Shown one piece after another: positions 4,466 to 61,799 of a stretch of DNA of 64,000 nucleotides (within the stretch, counting starts at the first letter, position 1; each line of letters starts with the position of its first letter). The notes under the pieces were generated by a model. It saw only the letters and a list, made by a program, of their open reading frames with translations. It searched no databases and had not been told where the DNA came from. The DNA comes from Ranitomeya imitator (Eukaryota): assembly GCF_032444005.1 (NCBI RefSeq), contig NC_091283.1, positions 787,090,001 to 787,154,000 on the forward strand. Reading direction: 5' to 3'. Position numbers and translations under genes: made by a program.

Positions 4466-6103
<1,638 letters not shown>

Positions 6104-11851: not shown

Positions 11852-13248
11852 CAGTGGGAATGAGAAATAATCAGACCCCTTTAAATTTTTCATTTTCTGC
11901 TTCATTGCAGCCATTTGCTAAATTCAAAAAAGTTCATTTTTTCTCATTAATGCACACTCTGCCCCCCATCTTGACTGAAAAAAACAGAAAAGTAGAATTT
12001 TTTGCAAATTTATTAAAAAAGAAAAACTGAAATATCACATAGTCATAAGTATTCAGACACTTTGCTCAGACACTCATATTTAAGTCACATGCTGTCCATT
12101 TCCTTGTGATCCTTGTTGAGATGGTTCTACTGCTTCACTGGAGTCCAGCTGTGTTAAATTAAACTGATAAGACTTGATATGGAAAGGCACACACCTGTCT
12201 ATATAAGACCTCATGGCTCACAGTGCATGTCAGACCAAATCAGAATCATGAGGTCAAAGAAACTAGCCAAGGTGCTCAGAGGCAGAATTGTGGCAAGGCA
12301 CAGATCTGGCCAAGGCTACAACAGCATTTCTGCAGTACTAAAGGTTCCTAAGAGCACAGTGGCCTCCATAATCCTTAAATGGAAGAAATTTAGGACCACC
12401 AGCAGTCTTCCTAGACCTGGCCGTCCTGCCAAACTGAGCAATCATGGGAGAAGAGCCTTGGTGAGAGAGGTAAAAGAGAACCCCAAGATCACTGTGGCAG
12501 AGCTCCAGAGATGTAGTAGTGAGATGGTAGAAAGTTCCACAAAGTCAACTATCACTGCAGCTCTCCACCAGTCGGGCCTTTATTGCAGAGTGGCTCGACG
12601 GAAGCCTCTACTCAGTGCAAGACATATGAAAGCCCGCATAGAGTTGGCAAAAAAACACACAAAGGACTCCCAGACTACGAGAAATAAGATTCTCTGGCAT
12701 GATGAGGCAAAGACAGAAATTTTTGGTGATAATTCTAAATGATATGTGTGGAGAAAACCAGGCACTGCTCATCACCTGCCCAATAGAATGCAAACAGTGA
12801 AACATGGTGGTGGCAGCATCATGCTATTGGGGTGTTTTTCAGCTGCAAGGACAGGATGACTGGTTGCCACTGAAGGAGACATGAATGTGGCCAAGTACAG
12901 GGATATCCTGGATGAAAACCTCTTCCAGAATGCTCTGGACCTCAGACTTGGCCAAAGGTTCACCTTCCAACAAGACAGTGACCCTAAGCATACAGCTAAA
13001 ATAACAAAGAAGTGGCTTCAGAACAACTCTGTGACCATTGTTTACTGACCCAGCCAAAGCCCTGACCTAAACCCAATTGAGCATCTCTGGAGAGACTTGG
13101 AAATTACTCATGGCTGTACTAGCCTAAAAAGGATGCTTCTACTCAATACTGAGCAACATTTCTTTTTTTTACATTTAGCAAATGGCTGCAATGAAGCAAA
13201 GAGTGAAAAATTAAATTAAAGGGGTCTGAATACTTTCAGTACCCACTG
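11852..13248 (+). mobile_element. Degenerate Tc1 element (stop codons, internal deletion)
   Basis: TA|CAGTGG...CCACTG termini. ORF 12179-12742 (MRSKKLAK...GRPAKLS...ILWHDEAK) is followed by decayed QQDSDPKH and [11 protein letters not shown]. Confidence 0.9.
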
Positions 13249-18366: not shown

Positions 18367-19514
18367 CAGTGCCTTGCGAAAGTATTCGGCTTCCTGAAAC
18401 TTTTCAACCTTTTCCCACATATCATGCTTCAAACATAAAGATACCAAATGTAATTTTTTGGTGAAGAATCAACAAGTGGAACACAGTTGTGAATTTGAAT
18501 GAAATTTATTGGTTATTTTAAATTTTTGGGGAAATTCAAAAACTGAAAAGTGGGGCATGCAATGTTATTCGTCCCCTTTACTTTCAGTGAAGCAAACTTA
18601 CTGCAGAAGTTCATTGTGGATCTCTGAATGATCGAATGTTGTCCTAAATGCCTAATGATGATAAATATAATCCACCTGTGTGTAACCAAGTCTCCGTATA
18701 AATGCACCTGCTCTGTGATAGTCTCAGGGTTCTGTTTGAAGCACAGAGAGCATCATGAAGACCAAGGAACACAACAACAGGCAGGTCCGTGATACTGTTG
18801 TGGAGAAGTTTAAAGCCGGATTTGGATACAAAATGATTTCCAAAACTTTAAACATCCCAAGGAGCACTGTGCAAGCGATCATATTGAAATGGAAGGAGTA
18901 TCATACCACTGCAAATCTACCAAGACCCGGCCGTCCCTCTAAACTTTCTTCTCAAACAAGGAGAAAACTGATCAGAGATGCAGCCAGGAGGCCCATGATC
19001 CCTCTGGATGAACTGCAGAGATCTACAGCTGAGGTGGGACAGTCTGTCCATAGGACAACAATCAGTCGTACACTGCACAAATCTGGCCTTTATGGTAGAG
19101 TGGCAAGAAGAAAACCATTTCTCAAAGATATCCATAAAAAGTGTAATTTAAAGTTTGCAACAAGCCACCAGGGAGACACACCAAACAAGTGGAAGAAGGT
19201 GCTCTGGTCAGATGAAACCAAAATTGAACTTTTTCGCAACAATGCCAAACGATATGTTTGGCGTAAAGGCAACACAGCTCATCACCCTGAACACACCATC
19301 CCCACTGGCCGAATAATTTTGCATGCCCCACTTTTCAGTTTTTGAATTTCCACAAAAATGTAAAATTACCAATAAATTTCATTCAACTTCACAATTGTGT
19401 TCCACTTGTTGATCCTTCAACAAAAATTTACATTTAGTATCTTTATGTTTGAAGCATGATATGTGGGAAAATGTTGAAAAGTTCCAGGGAGCAGAATACT
19501 TTCCCAAAGCACTG
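18367..19514 (+). mobile_element. Internally deleted Tc1 element (1148 bp)
   Basis: TA|CAGTGCCTTGCGAAAGTATTC...GCACTG|TA. ORF 18755-19345 covers the HTH and WSDETK, then runs into the right TIR; the second D and the E are missing. Confidence 0.92.
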
Positions 19515-22006: not shown

Positions 22007-25000
22007 ATGAGGAAGTATGGTGGAAGAGGTCGTGGCCGGGGGCGTTCATTGTCAGCTGGTAATGAGGGTAGTGGTAGTGGTGGAGCATCAGCTGGTCGTG
22101 GGAAAAAAAATATTGCACCTAAGTCTGGAGCTGTGGAGCCAGGTTCGTCGTCTGGCTACACAAGGCCTCGAACGCTCCCTTTTCTGGGAGTAGGAAAACC
22201 GCTTTTAAAGCCGGAGCAGCAAGAGCAAGTTTTGGCTTATCTTGCTGACTCAGCCTCTAGCTCTTTTGCCTCCTCTCGTGAAACTGGTAAATGTCAAAGC
22301 AGCGCGTCGTTAGTGGATGTTCACGGTCAGGGACAAGTCGCTTCCTTGTCCTCTTCAGCAAAAACAACAACAGAGAAGAATGCAGCAGGCGACACAACGG
22401 GTTACTCCATGGAGCTCTTTACACATACCGTCCCTGGCTTAGAAAGTGAAGCAGTTAACAGTCCATGCCCATTACAAGTTGAATCTGACATGGAGTGCAC
22501 TGATGCACAGCCACAACCAGACTACTATGCTGGTCCTTTGACTCAGACCACAACATTGCCCTCGCAGGGTGCTGATCAAGAATCAGACCCTGATGAGACT
22601 ATGTTGCCCCATCACGAACGCTATACCACCGACCGACACGGTGACACAGACGAAGTTGCACACGAGCTACAAGAAGAGGTAATAGATGACCCAGTTCTTG
22701 ACCCCGATTGGCAGCCATTGGGGGAACAGGGTGCAGGCGGCAGCAGTTCTGAAGCGGAGGAGGAGGGGCCGCAGCAGGCATCAACATCGCAACAGGTTCC
22801 ATCTGCCGGGCCCATATCTTGCCCAAAACGCGTGGCAAAGCCAAAACCTGTTGGAGGACAGCGTGGCCATCCGGTTAAAGCTCAGTCTGCAATGCCTGAA
22901 AAGGTATCCGATGCTAGAAAGAGTGCAGTCTGGCATTTTTTTAAACAACATCCAATTGATCAGCGCAAAGTCATCTGTCAAAAATGTTCAACTACCTTAA
23001 GCAGAGGACAGAATCTGAAAAGTCTCAATACAAGTTGCATGCATAGACATTTAACCACCATGCATTTGAAAGCCTGGACTAACTACCAAACGTCCCTTAA
23101 GGTTGTAGCACCCTCGGCCAATGAAGCTAGTCAGCAACGCAACATCCCTTCCGGCAGTGTAGGGCCACCATTTTCCGCACCACCTGCAGTATCTGTGCAG
23201 GTTTCTTTGCCAGGCCAAAGCAGTCAGGGTCAGGGAATCACCAATTTCGTAGTAGGAAACACTGCATCTAGGGCACCGGTGGCAACAATACCATCTCCCA
23301 CCGTCTCTCAGTCTGCCATGTCCACCGGCACCCCCGCTAGTTCCACGATCTCCAGCTCTCCAGTCCAGCTCACCCTACATGAGACTATGGTTAGAAAAAG
23401 GAAGTACTTAGCCTCGCATCCGTGTACACAGGGTTTGAACGCACACATAGCTAGACTAATCTCGTTAGAGATGATGCCCTACCGGTTAGTTGAAAGCGAA
23501 GCTTTCAAAGCCCTGATGGACTACGCTGTACCACGCTACGAGCTACCCAGTCGACACTTTTTTCCAGAAAAGCCATCCCAGCCCTCCACCAGCATGTTAA
23601 AGAGCGCATCGTCCATGCACTCAGGCAATCTGTGAGCACAAAGGTGCACCTGACAACAGATGCATGGACCAGTAGGCATGGCCAGGGACGTTACGTGTCC
23701 ATCACGGCACACTGGGTAAATGTGGTGGATGCAGGGTCCACAGGGGACAGCAAGTTTGGGACAGTTCTGCCTAGCCCACGGTCTAGGAAACAATTGGCTG
23801 TAGCCGTTCGCACCCCCTCCTCCTCCTCTTCGTCCTCCTGCAGAAGCGAGAGCTCGTCCACAGACCGCAGTCGCACAACCACTCCATCCGCAGCTGCCAC
23901 TGTTGCACACCAGGTCTCCCATTATGGGGCAGCTACTGGCAAACGTCAGCAGGCTGTATTGGCTATGAAGTGTTTGGGCGACAACAGACACACCGCTGAA
24001 GTTCTGTCCGAGTTCTTGCAGAAAGAAACGCAGTCGTGGCTGGGCACTGTAGATCTTGAGGCAGGCAAGGTAGTGAGTGATAACGGAAGGAATTTCATGG
24101 CTGCCATCTCCCTTTCCCAACTGAAACACATTCCTTGCCTGGCTCACACCTTAAACCTGGTGGTGCAGTGCTTCCTGAAAAGTTATCCGGGGTTATCCGA
24201 CCTGCTCCTCAAAGTGCGTGGACTTTGCTCACATATCCGCCGTTCGCCCGTACACTCCAGCCGTATGCAGACCTATCAGCGTTCTTTGAACCTTCCCCAG
24301 CATCGCCTAATCATAGACGTTGCAACAAGGTGGAACTCAACACTGCACATGCTTCAGAGACTGTGTGAACAGAGGCGGGCTGTTATGTTTTTGTGGGAGG
24401 ATACACATACACGGGCAGGCAGTAGGATGGCAGACATGGAGTTGTCAGGTGTGCAGTGGTCGAAGATTCAAGACATGTGTCAAGTCCTTCAGTGTTTTGA
24501 GGAATGCACACGGCTGGTTAGTGCAGACAACGCCATAATAAGCATGAGCATCCCCCTAATGCGTCTGCTGATGCAAAGTTTGATGCACATAAAGGATCAG
24601 GCGTCTACAGCTGACGAAGAGGAAAGCCTTGATGACAGTCAGCCATTGTCTGGCCAGGGCAGTGTACAGGACGAGGTAGCGGGCGAAGAGGAGGAGGAGG
24701 ACGAGGAGGATGATGGGGATGATTATATTTTTAATGAGGAAGCTTTTCCGGGGCCACTGGAAATTGGTGGCGCGGCAAGGCCGGGTTCTGGTTTTTTGAG
24801 GGACACAAGTGACGTGGATTTGCCTGAAACTGCCCCTCAACCAAGCACAACCGCAGATTTGAGAACTGGAACTTTGGCCCACATGGCGGATTATGCCTTA
24901 CGTATCCTCAAAAGGGACACACGCATAACTAAAATGATGAATGATGACGATTACTTGTTGGCCTGCCTCCTTGATCCTCGCTATAAAGGCAAATTGCAAA

Positions 25001-25575
25001 ATATAATGCAACATGAGAACTTGGAACTAATATTAGCAACCAAACAATCAACTCTTGTTGACCGTTTGCTTCTGGCATTCCCTGCACACAGCGCCCGTGA
25101 TCGTTCTCACACGAGCTGCAGGGGCCAGCAGACCAGAGGAGTTAGAGGGGCAGAAATCAGAAGTGGCGTTGGCCAGAGGGGTTTTCTGACCAGGTTGTGG
25201 AGTGATTTTGCTATGACCGCAGACAGGACAGGTACTGCAGCATCAATTCAAAGTGACAGGAGACAACATTTGTCCAATATGGTTACAAACTATTTTTCAT
25301 CCCTTATCGATGTTCTCCCTCAACCGTCATTCCCATTTGATTACTGGGCATCCAAATTAGACACCTGGCCAGAATTGGCAGAATATGCATTGCAGGAGCT
25401 TGCTTGCCCGGCAGCTAGTGTCCTATCAGAAAGAGTATTCAGTGCTGCAGGTTCAATACTAACAGAAAAAAGGACTCGTCTGGCTACCCAAAATGTAGAT
25501 GATCTAACCTTCATTAAAATGAACCACAACTGGATTTCGAAATCTTTTGCCCCACCTTGCCCGGCTGACACCTAG
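22007..25575 (+). pseudogene. hAT BED-finger transposase, frameshifted by a 1-nt deletion in a T run (about 23558-23563)
   Basis: ORFs 22007-23635 and 23632-25575 together are colinear with the 1192-aa ORF of copy 2. The run is T6 here and T7 in copy 2. Confidence 0.9.
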
Positions 25576-33014: not shown

Positions 33015-33360
33015 CATTAGGATTAGAGTTGGGCTAAAGTTAGGGTTAGGGCTAAAATTAGAGTTAGGGCTAAAGTTAGGGTTGAGGCTAGGGGTAGAGT
33101 TATNNNNNNNNNNNNNNNNNNNNNNNNNNNNNNNNNNNNNNNNNNNNNNNNNNNNNNNNNNNNNNNNNNNNNNNNNNNNNNNNNNNNNNNNNNNNNNNNN
33201 NNNNNNNNNNNNNNNNNNNNNNNNNNNNNNNNNNNGGGTAGGGTTAGGGTTTGGATTATGGGTAGGGTTAGGATTAGGGTTGAGATTAGGGGTAGGGTTA
33301 GGATTAGGGGTAGAGTTGGGAATAGGGTTAGGGGTGTGTTGGGGTTAGGGTTGGAGTTAG
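33015..33360. repeat. Degenerate telomere-like (TTAGGG/TTAGAG/CTAAAG)n array spanning the assembly gap 33104-33235
   Basis: Visible 6-bp periodicity on both sides of 132 N. Confidence 0.9.
33104..33235. other. Assembly gap (132 N)
   Basis: Run of N. Confidence 1.
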
Positions 33361-38719: not shown

Positions 38720-38996
38720 GGCTGCACGGTGGCTCAGTGTATAGCACTGCAGCCTTGCAGCGCTGGAGTCCTGGGTTCTAATCCCACGTTGGAAAACATC
38801 TGCAAGGAGTTTGTATGTTCTCCCTGTGTTTGCGTGGGTTTCCTCTGGGTTCTCCGGTTTCCTCCCACATTCCAAAGACATACTGATAAGGAATTTAGAT
38901 TGTGAGCCCCAACGGGGACAGCGATGATAATGTGTTCAAACTGTAAAGCGCTGCGGAATATGTTAGCGCTATATAAACATAAATATTATTATTATT
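38720..38996 (+). mobile_element. tRNA-derived SINE (V-SINE-like) with (ATT)n tail
   Basis: GGCTGCACGGTGGCTCAGTG...GGTTCTAATCCC...GAGTTTGTATGTTCTCCCTGTGTTTGCGTGGGTTTCC...AGCGCTATATAAA(ATT)n. Confidence 0.9.
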
Positions 38997-39114
38997 AGGC
39001 TGCGTTCACACACTGCATGCAGTAGCGCAGCCATGTCTAACTGCAAGGGTGAATGAGCCTACAAGTTTGCAGGTAACATGCAGCAGCTGTATCATGAGAT
39101 GCCAGTCTAATAGT

Positions 39115-40237
39115 CAAACTGGGGGTGTGAAAATCACAAAGAACGACCAAAACTGGTTGATATTAGTAAAAATACTATTTATTTAGAACATATTAACAGT
39201 AAAAAAGAAACAAGTAATCAGACAATAATGAGACAAAAGTGGACACATGGTGCGAGACACCGCACCAAACTGTCACCATGCAAAAACATGCAGACTGTGT
39301 AACCTAGGTCCCCAGGTAACAGATGTACATATAGGGGGATAAAGCAACCAGAAAAGGGTACTGCTGTGGCAGGTGGGCAAAATGATATTAGCGTCCAGGG
39401 CGCCTCAGGGGACCAAAATAGTATCCGTCAGACTATATAATATACACCCCACTGGGAAAAAGGCCCCTACCTAAACATCAAGATCCAAAGCATCAAAGAT
39501 CCAAAGCGACCAATTACCTAACAAACAACAAAAGTGCTGTACAGAAGAGTATTACCTCCTATGGAAGACCCTCGGTGCAGCCCGGTTATCAGTCGGCACG
39601 TCACCCGACGCGCATTTCGGAGAACCAACTCCTTCGTCACGGGGGTCACGCCGACAAAGTCGGTGACGTGCCGACTGGTAACCGGGCTGCACCGAGGGTC
39701 TTCCATAGGAGGTAATACTCTTCTGTACAGCGCTTTTGCTGTTTGTCATTTTGTTAGGTAATTGGTCGCTTTGGATCTTTTGCCTCTTATGGCGGCAGTG
39801 TCAGGAAGGTCCACAATATACCTGTGCACCCCTATTTTGGCTGACTATGTGCGGTCCTTGGCGTTTGTGTCGATGTTTAGGTAGGGGCCTTTTTCCCAGT
39901 GGGGTATATATTATATAGTCTGACGGATACTATTTTGGTCCCCTGAGGCGCCCTGGACGCTAATATCATTTTGCCCACCTGCCACAGCAGTACCCTTTTC
40001 TGGTTGCTTTATCCCCCTATATGTACATCTGTTACCTGGGGACCTAGGTTACACAGTCTGCATGTTTTTGCATGGTGACAGTTTGGTGCGGTGTCTCGCA
40101 CCATGTGTCCACTTTTGTCTCATTATTGTCTGATTACTTGTTTCTTTTTTACTGTTAATATGTTCTAAATAATGAGTATTTTTACTAATATCAAGCAGTT
40201 TTGGTTGTTCTTTGTGATTTTTCACCCCCCCAGTTTG
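39115..40237. mobile_element. Head-to-head inverted duplication of a Penelope-like or retrozyme-like non-coding unit
   Basis: Near-identical inverted arms (39115-39609, 39659-40237) around a spacer of about 49 bp that holds a hammerhead-like core. AATAAA lies near the outer end of the left arm on the minus strand. Confidence 0.7.
39592..39655 (-). ncRNA. Degenerate type I minimal hammerhead ribozyme motif
   Basis: Minus strand: GTCGGC-GTGACCCCC-GTGACGA-A-GGAG(TTGGTT)CTCC-GAAA-TGCGC-GTC-GGGTGACGTGCCGAC. Stem II, GAAA, the GUC triplet and an extended stem I are present. C3 is G and stem III carries one CpG-to-TpG change. Confidence 0.6.
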
Positions 40238-40420
40238 TTGTTTCTTTACGACTTGGTGTATCATGAATCCGACATAGGCGCAACATTTTGATTTTGCATT
40301 GCTGAGTATTGCATGATGTTGCTGTATAATACCTATTTTGCAGTCTAAAAGTCAGCAGATTGCCCTTTTTATGTGGTCCATTCATCAATATGTGCAAAAC
40401 TGTATACAGTTATTTACCTA

Positions 40421-41616
40421 CCGTATATACTCGAGTATAAGCCGAGATTTTCAGCCCATTTTTTTGGGCTGAAAGTCCCCCTCTCGGCTTATACTCGAGT
40501 CATATACCCGGGTGTCAGCAGGGGAGGGGGAGCGGGGGCTGTGTAATCATACTTACCTGCTCCCAGCGCGGTCCCTGCAGTCCCTGGCTTCTCCGGCGCT
40601 GCAGATTCTTCCTGTACTGAGCGGTCACATGGCACCGCTCATTACAGAAATGAATAGGCAGCTCCACCCCCATAGGGGAGGAGCCGCATATTCATTGCTG
40701 TAAATGATCGGTGCCATGTGACCGCTCAATTACAGGAAGAAGCCGCAGCGCCGGGGAAGCCAGGGACTGCAGGGACCGCGCTGGGAACAGGTAAGGGGAG
40801 CGCAGCGCTATAATTACCTGCTCCTCGCTCCGGCTCCGTCTGCAGCGTCCTCTAGCAGTGACGCTCAGGTTAGAGGGCGCTGTGACGTAGTCAGTGCGCG
40901 CCCTCTGCTGAGCGTCAGTGCTGGAGACGGAGCCGCACGAGGAGCAGGTAATTATTGAAAGCGCCGGCGTCCTGAGCAAGAGAGGTGAGTATGTGATTTT
41001 TTTTTTTTTTTTTATGGCAGCACCAGCAGCATTCTAAGGAGTACCTATGGGGCCATGAAGGTGCAGAGCATATAAGGGGCACAGCATTATAAGGAGCATC
41101 TATGGGGCCATAAAGGTGCAGAGCATATAAGGGGCACAGCATTATAAGGAGCACCTATGGGGCCATAATCAAAGGTGCAGAGCATATAAGGGGCACAGCA
41201 TTATAAGGAGCACCTATGGGGCCATAAAGGTGCAGAGCATATATGGGGCAGCATTCTAAGGAGCATCTATGGGGCCATAATCAAAGGTGCAGAGCATATA
41301 TGGCACAGCATTATAAGGAGCATCTATGGGGCCATAATCAAAGGTGCAGAGCATATATGGCACAGCATTATAAGGAGCACCTATGGGGCCATAATCAACG
41401 GTGCAGAGCATTGTATATAGCACAGTTGTATATGGAGCATCTATGGGGCAATAATGAACGGTATGGAGCATCTATTTTTATTTTTGAAATTCACCGGTAG
41501 CTGCTGCATTTTCTACCCTAGGCTTATACTCGAGTCAATAAGTTTTCCCAGTTTTTTTGTGGCAAAATTAGGGGGTCGGCTTATACTCGGGTCGGCTTAT
41601 ACTCGAGTATATACGG
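40421..41616 (-). mobile_element. Tc2-like non-autonomous element, related to 8610-10507, inverted
   Basis: Same TIR, TA TSD (40419-40420, 41617-41618) and an internal minisatellite of about 50 bp at about 41040-41470. Confidence 0.9.
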
Positions 41617-47358: not shown

Positions 47359-48200
47359 CTGCGCCTCGGGGCTCAGGGGAATCTGCCAGTATCCTCGACT
47401 TAGATCCATTATGGTCAGATATTTTGCACCAGCTAACCTCTCAAGCAGCTCCTTGATGTGCGGCATTGGGTGGGCGTCAGAGGCTGTGAGGAAGTTGAGC
47501 CCCCTGTAGTCCACGCAGAATTGGGTGATCCTTCTTTGGCACGAGGACTACAGATGAGGTCCACACACTCTTTGACCGTTGAATTACCCCCAGCTGTAAT
47601 ATCTCATCGATCTCCTGGCGCATAACCTGCTGCACCTGGTCAGAGATTCGATAGGATGTTCGCCGCAGTGGGGCATGATTCCCGGTGTCCACCTCGTGGA
47701 CTGCTAACTTAGTCCTTCCAAGTCGGTTGGAGAACACGGCCAGGAAGGGTTCCAGCTTGGTCTGCAACTGTGATCGCTGGGGTTCGGTTAGTGAGGCGCT
47801 TACCTCCACGTCCTCGATGGACCCACCGGCCTTAATTTGGCCCAGCATGTCCAGGAGGGTGTCTTCCTCCCCGTCTTCGGGCAGGCTGCAGACTGGCAGG
47901 ATGAAAGGTTCAGGTTCGTGATGAGCCTTCATCATGTTGATGTGGAAGGCTTTTCGCCTACCCCGAGCGTGGTCAAGCGTGACCACATACTTGACCGGGT
48001 TGAGCTGTTGGTGGACGTTGTATGGTCCTTCCCAGGCTGCCTGAAGCTTATCCTTTGGTACGGGGACCAGCACCCACACCTTTTGACCCATGTGGTAGAT
48101 CCACTTCCGGGTGTTCTGGTCAGCCTAAGCCCGCGTCATCTTGTCATGCACCAATTGCGTCAAGGTCTGCATCTTGTCACAGAAGCACATGGCATACTCC
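47359..48200 (-). pseudogene. pol fragment: integrase C-terminus (GPY) followed by truncated reverse transcriptase
   Basis: KLQAAWEGPYNV...HINMMKA, then EIDEILQLGVIQRSKS...VVLVPKKD and, in a shifted frame, FCVDYRGLN...MDLSRGYWQIPL. Confidence 0.85.
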
Positions 48201-58220: not shown

Positions 58221-61200
58221 ATGAGGAAGTCTAGTGGAAGAGGTCGTGGCCGGGGGCGTTCATTGTCAGCTGGTAATGAGGGTAGTGGTAGTGGTGGAGC
58301 ATCAGGTGGTCGTGGGGAAAAAAATATTGCACCTAAGTCTGGAGCTGTGGAGCCAGGTTCGTCGTCCGGCTACACAAGGCCTCGAACGCTCCCTTTTCTG
58401 GGATTAGGAAAACCGCTTTTAAAGCCGGAGCAGCAAGAGCAAGTTTTGGCTTATCTTGCTGACTCAGCCTCTAGCTCTTTTGCCTCCTCTCGTGAAACTG
58501 GTAAAAGTAAAAGCAGCGCGTCGTTAGTGGATGTTCACGGTCAGGGACAAGTCACTTCCTTGTCCTCTTCAGCAAAAACAACAACAGAGAAGAATGCAGC
58601 AGGCGACACAACGGGTTACTCCATGGAGCTCTTTACACATACCGTCCCTGGCTTAGAAAGTGAAGCAGTTAACAGTCCATGCCCATTACAAATTGAATCT
58701 GACATGGAGTGCAGTGACGCACAGCCACAGCCAGACTACTATGCTGGTCCTTTGACTCAGACCACAACATTGCCCTCGCAGGGTGCTGATCAAGAATCAG
58801 ACCCTGATGAGACTATGTTGCCCCATCACGAACGCTATACCACCGAACGACACGGTGACACAGACGAAGTTGCGCAGGAGGTACAAGAAGAGTTATTAGA
58901 TGACCCAGTTCTTGACCCCGATTGGCAGCCATTGGGGGAACAGGGTGCAGGCGGCAGCAGTTCTGAAGCAGAGGAGGAGGAGGGGCCGCAGCAGGCATCA
59001 ACATCGCCACAGGTTCCATCTGCCGGGCCCGTATCTTGCCCAAAACGCGTGGCAAAGCCAAAACCTGGTGGAGGACAGCGTGGCCATCCGGTTAAAGCTC
59101 AGTCTGCAATGCCTGAAAAGGTATCCGATGCTAGAAAGAGTGCAGTCTGGCATTTTTTTAAACAACATCCAATTGATCAGCGCAAAGTCATCTGTCAAAA
59201 ATGTTCTACTTCCTTAAGCAGAGGTCAGAATCTGAAAAGTCTCAATACTAGTTGCATGCATAGACATTTAACCACCATGCATTTGAAAGCTTGGACTAAC
59301 TACCAAACGTCCCTTAAGGTTGTTGCACCCTCGGCCAATGAAGCTAGTCATCAACGCAACATCCCTTCCGGCAGTGTAGGACCACCATTTAGCGCACCAC
59401 CTGCTGTATCTGTGCAGGTATCTTTGCCAGGCCAAAGCAGTCAGGGTCAGGGAATCACCAGTTTCGTAGTAGGAAACACTGCATCTAGGGCACCGGCGGC
59501 AACAATACCATCTCCCACCGTCTCTCAGTCTGCCATGTCCACCGGCACCCCCGCTAGTTCCACGATCTCCATCTCTCCAGTCCAGCTCACCCTACATGAG
59601 ACTATGGTTAGAAAAAGGAAGTACTTAGCCTCGCATCCGCGTACACAGGGTTTGAACGCCCACATAGCTAGACTAATCTCGTTAGAGATGATGCCCTACC
59701 GGTTAGTTGAAAGCGAAGCTTTCAAAGACCTGATGGACTACGCTGTACCACGCTACGAGCTACCCAGTCGACACTTTTTTTCCAGAAAAGCCATCCCAGC
59801 CCTCCACCAGCATGTTAAAGAGCGCATCGTCCATGCACTCAGGCAATCTGTGAGCACAAAGGTGCACCTGACAACAGATGCATGGACCAGTAGGCATGGC
59901 CAGGGACGTTACGTGTCCATCACGGCACACTGGGTAAATGTGGTGGATTCAGGGTCCACAGGGGACAGCAAGTTTGGGACAGTTCTGCCTAGCCCACGGT
60001 CTAGTAAACAGTTGTCTGTAGCCGTTCGCACCCCCTCCTCCTCCTCCTCCTCCTCGTCCTCCTGCAGAAGCAAGAGCTCGTCCACAGACCGCAGTCGCAC
60101 AAACACTCCATCCGCACCTGCCACTGTTGCACACCAGGTCTCCCATTATGGGGCAGCTACTGGCATACGTCAGCAGGCTGTATTGGCTATGAAGTGTTTG
60201 GGCGACAATAGACACACCGCGGAAGTTCTGTCCGAGTTCTTGCAGCAAGAAACGCAGTCGTGGCTGGGCACTGTAGATCTTGAGGCAGGCAAGGTAGTGA
60301 GTGATAACGGAAGGAATTTCATGGCTGCCATCTCCCTTTCCCAACTGAAACACATTCCTTGCCTGGCTCACACCTTAAACCTGGTGGTGCAGTGCTTCCT
60401 GAAAAGTTATCCGGGGTTATCCGACCTGCTCCTCAAAGTGCGTGGACTTTGCGCACATATCCGCCGTTCGCCTGTACACTCCAGCCGTATGCAGACCTAT
60501 CAGCGTTCTTTGAACCTTCCCCAGCATCGCCTAATCATAGACGTTGCAACAAGGTGGAACTCAACACTGCACATGCTTCAGAGACTGTGCGAACAGAGGC
60601 GGGCTGTTATGTTTTTGTGGGAGGATACACATACACGGGCAGGCAGTAGGATGGCAGACATGGAGTTGTCAGGTGTGCAGTGGTCGAAGATTCAAGACAT
60701 GTGTCAAGTCCTTCAGTGTTTTGAGGAATGCACACGGCTGGTTAGTGCAGACAACGCCATAATAAGCATGAGCATCCCCCTAATGCGTCTGCTGATGCAA
60801 AGTTTGACGCACATAAAGGATCAGGCGTCTGCACCAGAGGAAGAGGAAAGCCTTGATGACAGTCAGCGATTGTCTGGTCAGGGCAGTGTACATGACGAGG
60901 TACCGGGCGAAGAGGAGGTGGAGGATGAGGAGGATGATGGGGATGAGTATATTTTTAATGAGGAAGCTTTCCCGGGGGCACGGGAAATTGGTGGCGTGGC
61001 AAGGCCGGGTTCTGGTTTTTTGAGGGACACAAGTGACGTAGATTTGCCTGCAACTGCCCCTCAACCAAGCACAACCGCAGATTTGACAACGGGAACTTTG
61101 GCCCACATGGCGGATTATGCCTTGCGTATCCTCAAAAGGGACACACGCATTACAAAAATGATGAACGATGACGATTACTGGTTGGCCTGCCTCCTTGATC

Positions 61201-61799
61201 CTCGCTATAAAGGCAAATTGCAAAATATTATGCCACATGAGAACTTGGAACTAATATTAGCAACAAAACAATCAACTCTTGTTGACCGTTTGCTTCTGGC
61301 ATTCCCTGCACACAGCGCCCGTGATCGTTCTCACACGAGCTCCAGGGGCCAGCAGACCAGAGGTGTTAGAGGGGCAGAAATCAGAAGTGGCGTTGGCCAG
61401 AGGGGTTTTCTGACCAGGTTGTGGAGTGATTTTTCTAGGACCGCAGACAGGACAGGTACTGCAGCATCAATTCAAAGTGACAGGAGACAACATTTGTCCA
61501 GTATGGTTACAAACTATTTTTCATCCCTTATCGACGTTCTCCCTCAACCGTCATTCCCATTTGATTACTGGGCATCCAAATTAGACACCTGGCCAGAATT
61601 GGCAGAATATGCATTGCAGGAGCTTGCTTGCCCGGCAGCTAGTGTCCTATCAGAAAGAGTATTCAGTGCTGCAGGTTCAATACTAACAGAAAAAAGGACT
61701 CGTCTGTCTACCCAAAATGTAGATGATCTAACCTTCATTAAAATGAACCACAACTGGATTTCAAAATCTTTTGCCCCACCCTGCCCGGCTGACACCTAG
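58221..61799 (+). CDS. Intact hAT-family transposase, 1192 aa (BED zinc finger, DDE core, CxxH, C-terminal dimerisation domain)
   Basis: BED finger SAVWHFF...CQKC...MHRHLTTMH; LTTDAWTS; VVSDNGRN; PCLAHTLNL; TRWNST; LLDPRYK; CPAASVLSERVFSAAG. Long RG-rich and low-complexity N-terminus; no stop codons or frameshifts. Confidence 0.95.
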   Translation: MRKSSGRGRGRGRSLSAGNEGSGSGGASGGRGEKNIAPKSGAVEPGSSSGYTRPRTLPFLGLGKPLLKPEQQEQVLAYLADSASSSFASSRETGKSKSSASLVDVHGQGQVTSLSSSAKTTTEKNAAGDTTGYSMELFTHTVPGLESEAVNSPCPLQIESDMECSDAQPQPDYYAGPLTQTTTLPSQGADQESDPDETMLPHHERYTTERHGDTDEVAQEVQEELLDDPVLDPDWQPLGEQGAGGSSSEAEEEEGPQQASTSPQVPSAGPVSCPKRVAKPKPGGGQRGHPVKAQSAMPEKVSDARKSAVWHFFKQHPIDQRKVICQKCSTSLSRGQNLKSLNTSCMHRHLTTMHLKAWTNYQTSLKVVAPSANEASHQRNIPSGSVGPPFSAPPAVSVQVSLPGQSSQGQGITSFVVGNTASRAPAATIPSPTVSQSAMSTGTPASSTISISPVQLTLHETMVRKRKYLASHPRTQGLNAHIARLISLEMMPYRLVESEAFKDLMDYAVPRYELPSRHFFSRKAIPALHQHVKERIVHALRQSVSTKVHLTTDAWTSRHGQGRYVSITAHWVNVVDSGSTGDSKFGTVLPSPRSSKQLSVAVRTPSSSSSSSSSCRSKSSSTDRSRTNTPSAPATVAHQVSHYGAATGIRQQAVLAMKCLGDNRHTAEVLSEFLQQETQSWLGTVDLEAGKVVSDNGRNFMAAISLSQLKHIPCLAHTLNLVVQCFLKSYPGLSDLLLKVRGLCAHIRRSPVHSSRMQTYQRSLNLPQHRLIIDVATRWNSTLHMLQRLCEQRRAVMFLWEDTHTRAGSRMADMELSGVQWSKIQDMCQVLQCFEECTRLVSADNAIISMSIPLMRLLMQSLTHIKDQASAPEEEESLDDSQRLSGQGSVHDEVPGEEEVEDEEDDGDEYIFNEEAFPGAREIGGVARPGSGFLRDTSDVDLPATAPQPSTTADLTTGTLAHMADYALRILKRDTRITKMMNDDDYWLACLLDPRYKGKLQNIMPHENLELILATKQSTLVDRLLLAFPAHSARDRSHTSSRGQQTRGVRGAEIRSGVGQRGFLTRLWSDFSRTADRTGTAASIQSDRRQHLSSMVTNYFSSLIDVLPQPSFPFDYWASKLDTWPELAEYALQELACPAASVLSERVFSAAGSILTEKRTRLSTQNVDDLTFIKMNHNWISKSFAPPCPADT

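What the first reader, a model, noticed from the sequence alone, without database searches (positions are those of the whole stretch)
39115..40237. 1.1-kb inverted repeat centred on a hammerhead ribozyme, with the second arm starting at the predicted cleavage site
Seen: two near-identical arms diverge from a 49-bp spacer. The minus strand across the spacer reads as a type I minimal hammerhead: extended bulged stem I, (G)TGACGA, an extra A, 4-bp stem II, GAAA, near-palindromic stem III (ATGCGCGT, from ACGCGCGT by one CpG decay) and GTC. The predicted cut is between 39607 and 39606. The plus-strand arm begins GTC-GGTGACGTGCCGAC at 39659-39662, within 3 nt of that cut, and both arms run about 500 nt to an AT-rich end. 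Established: Penelope-like elements and metazoan retrozymes carry minimal hammerheads with palindromic stem III that act as dimers, and Penelope insertions often have inverted segments. Inference: this is a snapshot of a ribozyme-processed, non-coding RNA being retrotransposed with a template switch, possibly an undescribed anuran retrozyme family that may also form circular RNA. This is my best candidate for a novel system here.
Basis: partly seen in the sequence, partly recalled or inferred. Interest (0 to 1): 0.8.

Follow-up and report, generated by a model that had tools for sequence, protein, structure and literature searches.

The report
Head-to-head hammerhead retroelement insertion, Penelope style
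This is one old insertion of a small, protein-free frog jumping element laid down as two mirror-image copies, the way Penelope-type retroelements usually insert. One copy keeps a damaged self-cutting (hammerhead) RNA motif and the other starts at that motif's predicted cut, so it is a clean example of a known kind, not a new system.

Summary
Two arms (39115-39609 minus, 39659-40237 plus) are 98% identical around a 49-bp spacer. The spacer's minus strand carries the only hammerhead-like motif in the 64 kb.

The motif has the hallmarks published for Penelope-element hammerheads:
- an extra base between positions 9 and 10.1;
- a G10.1-C11.1 pair;
- a palindromic helix III;
- a GUC cut triplet.

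Position 3 is G instead of the essential C, and Rfam gives only 12 bits, so this copy should not cleave.

New findings:
- The right copy runs 103 nt further, to 40340.
- The whole structure is bracketed by a 12-bp target duplication (39103-39114 and 40341-40352, 11/12 identical).
- The element is multi-copy in the genome, with 3'-biased depth.
- It has no ORF, no tandem unit and no second ribozyme.

Inverted 5'-truncated copies, one target duplication and a one-sided 3' tail are the documented Penelope-like insertion architecture, here carrying a non-coding hammerhead-bearing passenger. The right arm starts 0-3 nt from the predicted cut, which fits a ribozyme-cleaved template, but one locus gives only about a 1% coincidence.

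A new retrozyme family and circular RNA are not supported. The scan has already noted similar fold-back hammerhead insertions elsewhere in this genome. Verdict: new member of a known kind, modest interest.

The parts
39103..39114 (.). Left copy of the target-site duplication (CAGTCTAATAGT), directly abutting the left arm
   Evidence: It matches 40341-40352 at 11 of 12 positions. Only 10 of 20000 shuffles of the right-hand region give such a match.
39115..39658 (-). Left copy of the non-coding element. Its sense strand is the minus strand: 3' end at 39115, 5' end at the centre. It runs 49 nt further 5' than the right copy, through the hammerhead-like motif.
   Evidence: Alignment of the arms. 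It is multi-copy in DNA contigs, with depth 360-590 over 39097-39340 falling to 1-4 at 39489-39586. The longest ORF is 75 aa.
39592..39655 (-). Hammerhead-like motif (type I, Penelope-element style). Helix I 5' strand 39655-39641; core GTGACGA 39640-39634 with G at position 3; extra A 39633; helix II 39632-39619; GAAA 39618-15; palindromic helix III 39615-39608; GUC 39609-07; predicted cut 39607|39606; helix I 3' strand 39606-39592.
   Evidence: Sequence. Only relaxed-descriptor hit in the window, 0.015 expected. Rfam Hammerhead_1 12 bits at 39601-39648. The minimum-energy fold keeps helices I and II, -30.4 kcal/mol, z -2.7. Depth spikes to 442 at 39587-39635. The hallmarks match PMC4209133.
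39659..39661 (.). Head-to-head joint. GTC could belong to either copy: it may be microhomology, or the last three bases before the cut.
   Evidence: Alignment of the arms.
39662..40237 (+). Right copy, the part mirrored in the left copy. Its first base corresponds to the first or second base after the predicted ribozyme cut.
   Evidence: A DNA contig matches 39662-39780 without a mismatch (record 6).
40238..40340 (+). One-sided 3' extension ('tail') of the right copy, absent from the left copy
   Evidence: Seven DNA contigs of other copies cover 40226 and read A there, as the left arm does. Contigs starting near 40219, such as record 8 (40219-40338), run across the arm end at 40237 into the extension. 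Depth stays 300-370 to about 40321, then 81, then 0. The left outer flank 39048-39096 has depth 0. The extension ends at the right target duplication.
40341..40352 (.). Right copy of the target-site duplication (CAGTCTAAAAGT)

Best explanation
A single retrotransposition event of the Penelope-like type inserted a short (about 0.7 kb), protein-free, hammerhead-bearing element as two head-to-head copies. The element is either the 3' terminal (pseudo-LTR) part of a Penelope-like element or a non-autonomous derivative of one, i.e. a solo 'non-LTR retrozyme' unit.

Inferred mechanism:
1. The element's RNA was bound by a Penelope-like RT/GIY-YIG protein supplied in trans.
2. The protein made staggered cuts 12 bp apart in both target strands.
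3. Each free 3' end primed reverse transcription of an element RNA. Priming on the top strand started at an internal site (after ...CAGUUUG). Priming on the bottom strand started 103 nt further 3' (after ...CUAUUUUG). This gave the one-sided tail.
4. The two cDNAs grew toward each other and were joined 5'-to-5' at 39659-39661.

The right-hand cDNA stopped at the hammerhead cut, most simply because its template had self-cleaved there. The left-hand cDNA read through an uncleaved ribozyme for 49 more bases. The copy has since decayed, or was copied with errors: G at position 3, about 2% divergence between arms, and an ~84-nt deletion in the left arm. As it stands it is an inert relic.

Shown: the inverted repeat, the target duplication, the tail, the multi-copy status, the motif and its position.
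Inferred: the enzyme, priming on both strands, and ribozyme cleavage of the template.
For: - Arms are 98% identical with 3' ends outward.
- A 12-bp target duplication (11/12) lies exactly at the left arm end and at the end of the right extension, 10/20000 by chance.
- The extension belongs to the element: contigs of other copies read through 40226-40262, and depth is high to ~40321 but zero in both outer flanks.
- Both copies end after TTTG (sequence).
- Depth is 3'-biased, as expected from 5' truncation.
- The two arms share at least 8 bases that differ from the family majority (39152, 39166, 39215, 39239, 39246, 39262, 39299, 39320), so they come from one source.
- There is no ORF over 75 aa.
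- The hammerhead-like motif is the only one in 64 kb. It carries three features that PMC4209133 lists as specific to Penelope-element hammerheads.
- PMC8557442 describes the inverted 5'-truncated copy plus one-sided tail as typical of these elements.
- PMC11167929 shows cleavage and extension of both target strands, internal RT initiation at two sites, and the tail as the stretch between them.
- The right arm starts 0-3 nt from the predicted cut. About 7 of ~730 possible truncation points would do so, roughly 1%.
Against: - No RT/GIY-YIG gene lies in the window. The large ORFs are Tc1/mariner, hAT and Ty3-like, so the partner is assumed.
- The tail is 103 nt, not the 30-40 nt usually quoted.
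- Position 3 of the ribozyme is G, which abolishes cleavage in tested hammerheads (PMC11167929). If the source RNA also had G, the cleaved-template step fails.
- Frangieh et al. found that the ribozyme is dispensable for insertion in vitro and saw no RNA ends at the cut site.
- I could not read other copies base by base. The family's 5' end, its base at position 3 and the distribution of 5' ends are unknown.
- A second exact direct repeat (TGTATCATGA, 39088 and 40257) is unexplained.
Confidence: 0.72

Rival explanations
1. One reading: a member of an undescribed anuran retrozyme family that cycles through self-cleaved, circular RNA, caught in the act of template switching.
For: The hammerhead-like motif and the joint at its cut. 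The hammerhead segment is shared with more abundant families of this genome, with a depth spike of 442. Contigs of a run guessed to be RNA touch 39115-39438 and 39596-39645. Amphibian retrozymes do make circular RNA (PMC7229834).
Against: There is no tandem unit and no second ribozyme at the locus. The 3' end of the copies does not run into a hammerhead, so the copy is not a permuted unit of a circle. G at position 3. No run on record as RNA holds the stretch. The class is already described in amphibians, and its Penelope origin is published.
Confidence: 0.12
2. Same Penelope-style insertion, but the start of the right arm at the cut site is not due to ribozyme cleavage. It is a chance 5' truncation, an RT stop at the folded ribozyme core, or joining of the two cDNAs at the GTC microhomology.
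For: Only one locus, with a coincidence of about 1%. GTC is shared at the joint. The region folds stably, -30.4 kcal/mol. The preserved ribozyme has the inactivating G3. PMC11167929 saw no RNA ends at the cut and no need for the ribozyme in vitro.
Against: An RT stopped by helix I would halt about 15 nt earlier, at the base of the helix near 39592, not after copying its whole 3' strand. Unchecked notes of this scan report the same coincidence at other insertions in this genome.
Confidence: 0.35
3. The palindrome arose at the DNA level: an inverted duplication of a single earlier insertion, or a fold-back/MITE-type DNA transposon with long terminal inverted repeats.
For: Long inverted repeats with a short spacer are what fold-back elements look like. 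Palindromes can form at breaks.
Against: Depth along the arms is very uneven (hundreds at the 3' part, 1-4 at 39489-39586), so the family does not move as a whole palindrome. One arm has a 103-nt extension. The 12-bp duplication brackets the whole structure with the two 3' ends outward, as double target-primed synthesis predicts. No other copy lies in the window.
Confidence: 0.05
4. The hammerhead resemblance is accidental, and the spacer is just the extra 5' sequence of the longer copy.
For: Rfam gives 12 bits against a cut-off of 34, and nothing at gathering. The C3-G8 pair is missing.
Against: 0.015 relaxed hits are expected per window. Three class-specific features not needed for a generic hammerhead are present. 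Among 73 metagenome matches to the same core pattern without C at position 3, only 3 (one sequence family) show even a 4-nt palindrome plus a 3-bp helix I. Rfam is insensitive to this class: tandem, canonical-core examples from lake metagenomes reach 22 bits or are missed. The segment is conserved across families.
Confidence: 0.05

Closest known systems
Penelope-like element (PLE) insertion architecture: pseudo-LTR, adjacent inverted 5'-truncated copy, one-sided 30-40-bp tail (Evgen'ev and Arkhipova 2005; Craig et al. 2021, PMC8557442; Frangieh et al. 2024, PMC11167929)
   Same: Two inverted copies with 3' ends outward, unequal 5' truncation, one target duplication, an extension at one end only, and a hammerhead in the terminal non-coding part.
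   Different: No RT/GIY-YIG ORF in the copies. The tail is 103 nt rather than 30-40. The hammerhead lies about 545-680 nt from the 3' end, not about 90 nt as in the Anolis element.
Metazoan non-LTR retrozymes, including amphibian ones (Cervera and de la Pena 2020, PMC7229834; Li, Clavereau and Pollet 2026, bioRxiv 10.64898/2026.07.22.740005)
   Same: Non-coding, moderate GC (45%), type I hammerhead with a weak palindromic helix III that would need a dimer, a target duplication longer than 4 bp, and dependence on PLEs. 'Monomer' (solo) copies are common in Xenopus.
   Different: Not a tandem array. There is one ribozyme only, with G at position 3. The copy is about 680-730 nt, at the long end of the published 51-972 bp range. 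No circular RNA evidence.
PLE minimal hammerheads (Cervera and de la Pena 2014, PMC4209133)
   Same: Extra unpaired base between A9 and G10.1, a G10.1-C11.1 pair, and a palindromic 15.2-16.2/helix III. That paper also reports pairs of motifs 100-700 bp apart on opposite strands.
   Different: Helix II is 4 bp, as in canonical motifs. Position 3 is G, and not in the U3-A8 covarying form. Only one of the two inverted copies keeps the motif.
Ribozyme-defined 5' ends of retrotransposon RNA (HDV-like ribozymes of R2 and L1Tc; hammerhead of the schistosome Sm-alpha SINE); cited from my own knowledge, not checked here
   Same: A self-cleaving ribozyme sets the 5' end of the RNA that is reverse-transcribed. 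That would explain a copy starting at the cut.
   Different: In those elements the ribozyme stays 3' of the cut and is carried in the copy. In a type I hammerhead the core lies 5' of the cut and is lost from the cleaved template, as in the right arm here.

Membership tests
Hammerhead ribozyme, type I (Rfam RF00163 and clan CL00010) | Core CUGANGA with C3 pairing to G8 | tested here: not met
   The minus strand 39640-39634 reads GUGACGA, so position 3 is G. A strict pattern search finds no canonical motif in the window.
Hammerhead ribozyme, type I (Rfam RF00163 and clan CL00010) | GAAA, a UH cleavage triplet, and helices I and II around the core | tested here: met
   GAAA 39618-15; GUC 39609-07; helix II GGAG/CUCC; helix I of 6+2+4 bp in the minimum-energy fold.
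Hammerhead ribozyme, type I (Rfam RF00163 and clan CL00010) | Score at or above Rfam's gathering threshold | tested here: not met
   12 bits against 34; no match at gathering thresholds. Calibration: tandem canonical-core motifs of the same style reach only 22 bits or are missed.
Hammerhead ribozyme, type I (Rfam RF00163 and clan CL00010) | Self-cleavage | not testable with these tools
   Needs in vitro transcription. C3G abolishes cleavage in tested motifs (PMC11167929).
PLE-type minimal hammerhead (PMC4209133) | [quoted passage not shown] | tested here: met
   A at 39633; feature as listed.
PLE-type minimal hammerhead (PMC4209133) | G10.1-C11.1 pair and palindromic 15.2-16.2/helix III | tested here: met
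   G 39632 pairs with C 39619. AUGCGCGU (39615-39608) pairs with itself at all 8 positions when G-U is allowed.
Penelope-like element insertion | Inverted 5'-truncated copy adjacent to the other copy's 5' end | tested here: met
Penelope-like element insertion | Target-site duplication around the whole unit | tested here: met
   39103-39114 and 40341-40352, 11/12 identical, 10/20000 by chance.
Penelope-like element insertion | Extension (tail) at one end only | tested here: met
   40238-40340 is present only on the right and is part of the family according to contigs of other copies. It is longer than the usual 30-40 bp.
Penelope-like element insertion | RT plus GIY-YIG ORF (autonomous element) | tested here: not met
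   No ORF over 75 aa in 39050-40400. The large ORFs of the window are Tc1/mariner, hAT and Ty3-like. This copy is therefore non-autonomous or a truncated tail.
Non-LTR retrozyme (PMC7229834) | Head-to-tail tandem units, each with a type I hammerhead | tested here: not met
   No direct repeat inside 39100-40350 and one motif only. Whether the family forms arrays elsewhere could not be tested.
Non-LTR retrozyme (PMC7229834) | Linear and circular unit-length RNA | not testable with these tools
   No run on record as RNA holds the stretch. Only contigs of a run guessed to be RNA touch parts of it.

The most novel reading that the evidence does not exclude
The inversion joint at the cut site may be a genomic footprint of hammerhead self-cleavage in vivo during Penelope-type retrotransposition. 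One of the two RNAs held by the (dimeric) RT/endonuclease complex would have been cut by the ribozyme before or during reverse transcription, and the other not. If 5' ends and joints of this and sister families pile up at the cut genome-wide, that would be the first in vivo evidence that these ribozymes act in the transposition cycle. The only biochemical study could not show this.
Probability: 0.3. Interest if true: 0.55.

Novelty: new member of a known kind. Interest (0 to 1): 0.3.

Why it matters
What hammerheads do in Penelope-like elements and animal retrozymes is still open. The one in vitro study found the ribozyme dispensable for insertion and saw no RNA ends at the cut. A copy whose 5' end sits on the predicted cut, next to a sister copy that read through the ribozyme, is the kind of footprint that could settle this if it recurs. 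This genome seems to hold many such insertions, so the question can be tested by counting. As a single locus it is a well-preserved, fully delimited example of a known insertion mode (target duplication, two RT start sites, joint), useful for annotation and for teaching the architecture, and not a new system.

Tried and rejected
1. TGTATCATGA (39088-39097 and 40257-40266) as the target duplication. It is an exact 10-mer (28/5000 and 12/300 shuffles). I rejected it because it leaves two unlike 17- and 19-nt stubs, and because other family copies read through 40238-40262. It stays unexplained.
2. The copy as a permuted unit of a tandem or circular element. The 3' ends do not align with the hammerhead-bearing spacer beyond a weak, T-rich resemblance seen by eye and not tested separately. 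A word-9 BLAST of the left copy plus spacer against the window found only the mirrored arm. The 103-nt extension has no match elsewhere in the window.
3. An 'AC-rich stem-loop' at the RT start, as in the Anolis element. Only a 4-5-bp hairpin forms, no better than shuffles.
4. Fetching other copies through ORF translations. Two word-indexed protein searches found nothing. The exhaustive search gave three unrelated repeat proteins, and the one contig I fetched has no hammerhead.
5. A viral-contig scan with the helix II/GAAA string gave 0 hits.
6. A metagenome scan with the core pattern gave 116 loci, mostly chance matches in coding DNA. One lake tandem family and L019 are real hammerheads. I used them only to calibrate Rfam and to estimate false positives.
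7. The search of earlier findings by sequence returned nothing.
8. RNA evidence: no run on record as RNA holds the stretch. Nothing can be concluded about expression.
9. The base at position 3 in other copies could not be read. The variant table of the single read-laying run was truncated.

Full report
**1. Observation**

The window is vertebrate DNA rich in transposons. Earlier notes of this scan call the genome a poison frog. I did not verify the species, because run and organism names are coded.

- The repeat finder reports inverted arms 39121-39479/39872-40230 (359 nt, 97%) and 39521-39605/39662-39746 (85 nt, 96%).
- A global alignment of the two copies in sense orientation gives 10 mismatches in 494 columns (98.0%). 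It also shows an ~84-nt segment present only on the right (39781-39871, replaced on the left by a 15-nt local duplication), an 8-nt indel and two 1-nt indels.
- These differences exclude an assembly or adapter palindrome.
- No other copy lies in the window.

**2. The hammerhead**

On the minus strand the spacer and the start of the left arm read as follows:

| Part | Sequence | Coordinates |
|---|---|---|
| Helix I, 5' strand | | 39655-39641 |
| Core | GUGACGA | 39640-39634 |
| Extra base | A | 39633 |
| Helix II with 6-nt loop | GGAG / CUCC | 39632-39619 |
| Core | GAAA | 39618-39615 |
| Helix III | AUGCGCGU, self-complementary at all eight positions with G-U | 39615-39608 |
| Cut triplet | GUC | 39609-39607 |
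| Helix I, 3' strand | | 39606-39592 |

- A relaxed descriptor that allows any base at position 3 finds this one site in 64 kb. Shuffled windows give 0.015.
- Against membership: position 3 is G, and C3G abolishes cleavage (PMC11167929). Rfam scores the site at 12 bits against a cut-off of 34, with nothing at gathering thresholds.
- I calibrated that score. A metagenome scan with the core pattern recovered a lake-water family of 590-655-nt tandem repeats with a canonical core, the same extra base, and an ACUAGU helix III (L037, L060, L062 and others). Rfam gives them 22 bits at best, or misses them. Rfam's thresholds therefore say little about this class.
- Among 73 pattern matches without C at position 3, only three (one sequence family) have even a 4-nt palindrome plus a 3-bp helix I.
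- I conclude that the motif descends from a real Penelope-type hammerhead, and that this copy is catalytically dead.

**3. True limits of the insertion**

Laying DNA contigs of the species on 38950-40400 at 80% likeness shows a multi-copy family.

| Region | Summed depth |
|---|---|
| 39097-39340 | 360-590 |
| 39391-39439 | 78 |
| 39489-39586 | 1-4 |
| 39587-39635 (hammerhead) | 442 |
| Left outer flank, 39048-39096 | 0 |
| Right of the mirrored arm, to about 40321 | 300-370 |
| 40322-40370 | 81 |
| 40371-40400 | 0 |

- Seven contigs cover 40226 and all read A there, the state of the left arm and not of this right arm.
- Contigs starting near 40219, such as record 8 (40219-40338), run across the arm end at 40237 into the extension. 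They vary among themselves at 40254, 40259 and 40262.
- So other copies continue past 40237, and the right copy really ends near 40340.
- Exactly there lies CAGTCTAAAAGT (40341-40352). It matches CAGTCTAATAGT (39103-39114), the 12 bases that abut the left arm, at 11 of 12 positions. Only 10 of 20000 shuffles do as well.
- Both copies end after TTTG.

The structure is therefore: target duplication; left copy (minus sense, 39115-39658); joint GTC (39659-39661); right copy (39662-40340, of which 40238-40340 has no mirror); target duplication.

I first took an exact 10-mer (TGTATCATGA, 39088 and 40257) for the duplication. It leaves two unlike stubs and conflicts with the contig evidence. It is now an unexplained match between target DNA and the tail.

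**4. What it is**

- The copies have no ORF over 75 aa, 45% GC and no internal direct repeat.
- The two arms share at least eight bases that differ from the family majority, so they are sisters from one source.
- Frangieh et al. showed that a purified Penelope-like protein cleaves and extends both target strands, starts reverse transcription at two internal sites, and that the tail is the stretch between those sites (PMC11167929).
- Vertebrate hammerhead retrozymes, amphibian ones included, have been described. They were recently argued to be non-autonomous derivatives of Penelope pseudo-LTRs, with solo 'monomers' common in Xenopus (PMC7229834; bioRxiv 10.64898/2026.07.22.740005).
- The window holds no RT/GIY-YIG gene. 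Its large ORFs are Tc1/mariner, hAT and Ty3-like. Unchecked notes of this scan report full-length Penelope elements and many hammerhead fold-back insertions elsewhere in this genome.

**5. Mechanism and the cut-site coincidence**

Inferred sequence of events:
1. The endonuclease makes staggered nicks 12 bp apart.
2. Each 3' end primes cDNA on an element RNA, one at the internal start and one 103 nt further 3'.
3. The two cDNAs are joined 5'-to-5'.

The right copy begins GG UGACGUGCCGAC, the first or second base after the predicted cut. The left copy reads through the ribozyme for 49 more bases. About 7 of roughly 730 possible truncation points would fall this close, which is near 1%.

A cleaved template is the simplest reading. 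An RT blocked by helix I would stop about 15 nt earlier. The cautions are that this is one locus, that GTC is shared at the joint, that the surviving motif has G3, and that in vitro the ribozyme was dispensable with no RNA ends seen at the cut. I give the cleaved-template step about even odds. The Penelope-style origin of the whole structure gets about 0.7.

**6. Age and state**

Divergence between the arms is 2%. It is unevenly spread: none over 39179-39444, but five mismatches and an indel in the outer 65 nt. I cannot explain this clustering. Early RT errors, two slightly different templates, or gene conversion are all possible. The locus has one dead ribozyme and cannot yield unit-length or circular RNA. 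If transcribed, it would fold into a long hairpin.

**7. Verdict**

This is a new member of a known kind, already seen repeatedly by this scan in the same genome. Its remaining value is as one data point for a countable, genome-wide test of whether hammerhead cleavage sets the 5' ends of Penelope-dependent templates.

Noticed in passing
window 38950-38998: Part of an extremely abundant repeat. Summed contig depth is about 494,000 in the DNA run, against hundreds for the element studied. It is also present in the small runs X3 and X4 (X4 is labelled as another species) and in the possible RNA run X8.
   Followed up: no
window 39088-39097 and 40257-40266: An exact 10-mer, TGTATCATGA, occurs in the target DNA 5 nt left of the target duplication and inside the element's one-sided tail. 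Chance is 0.6-4%. It may be chance, or a preference of the endonuclease complex for tail-like targets.
   Followed up: partly
window 39126-39178 versus 39179-39444: Mismatches between the two arms cluster next to the RT start (5 plus an indel in 65 nt), while 266 nt in the middle are identical.
   Followed up: partly
L037:157-834, L060:253-867, L062:95-774 (also L018, L021, L031, L034, L047, L070, L090, L093, L101): Freshwater metagenome contigs carry 590-655-nt tandem repeats. Each unit has a canonical-core type I hammerhead with an extra U after A9 and an ACUAGU helix III, so they look like retrozyme arrays of some eukaryote. Rfam scores them at 22 bits or misses them. L019 carries a single similar motif with ACGCGU.
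   Followed up: partly
window 41003-41471: A tandem array of 55-60-nt units, 65-97% identical to the reference copy.
   Followed up: no
window 40430-40501, 40552-40795, 40809-40956: Three hairpin or inverted-repeat structures just right of the insertion, MITE-like. They give weak chance-level matches to microRNA models.
   Followed up: no
window 4686-5738, 12179-12742, 18755-19345, 22007-25575, 47477-48091, 58221-61799: Tc1/mariner transposase ORFs (one of 350 aa with HTH and DDE_3), two hAT elements (one split across two frames, one intact 1192-aa ORF with zf-BED and the hAT dimerisation domain), and a Ty3-like integrase fragment.
   Followed up: partly
window 33104-33235: A run of 132 N (gap or masked), left untouched.
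   Followed up: no
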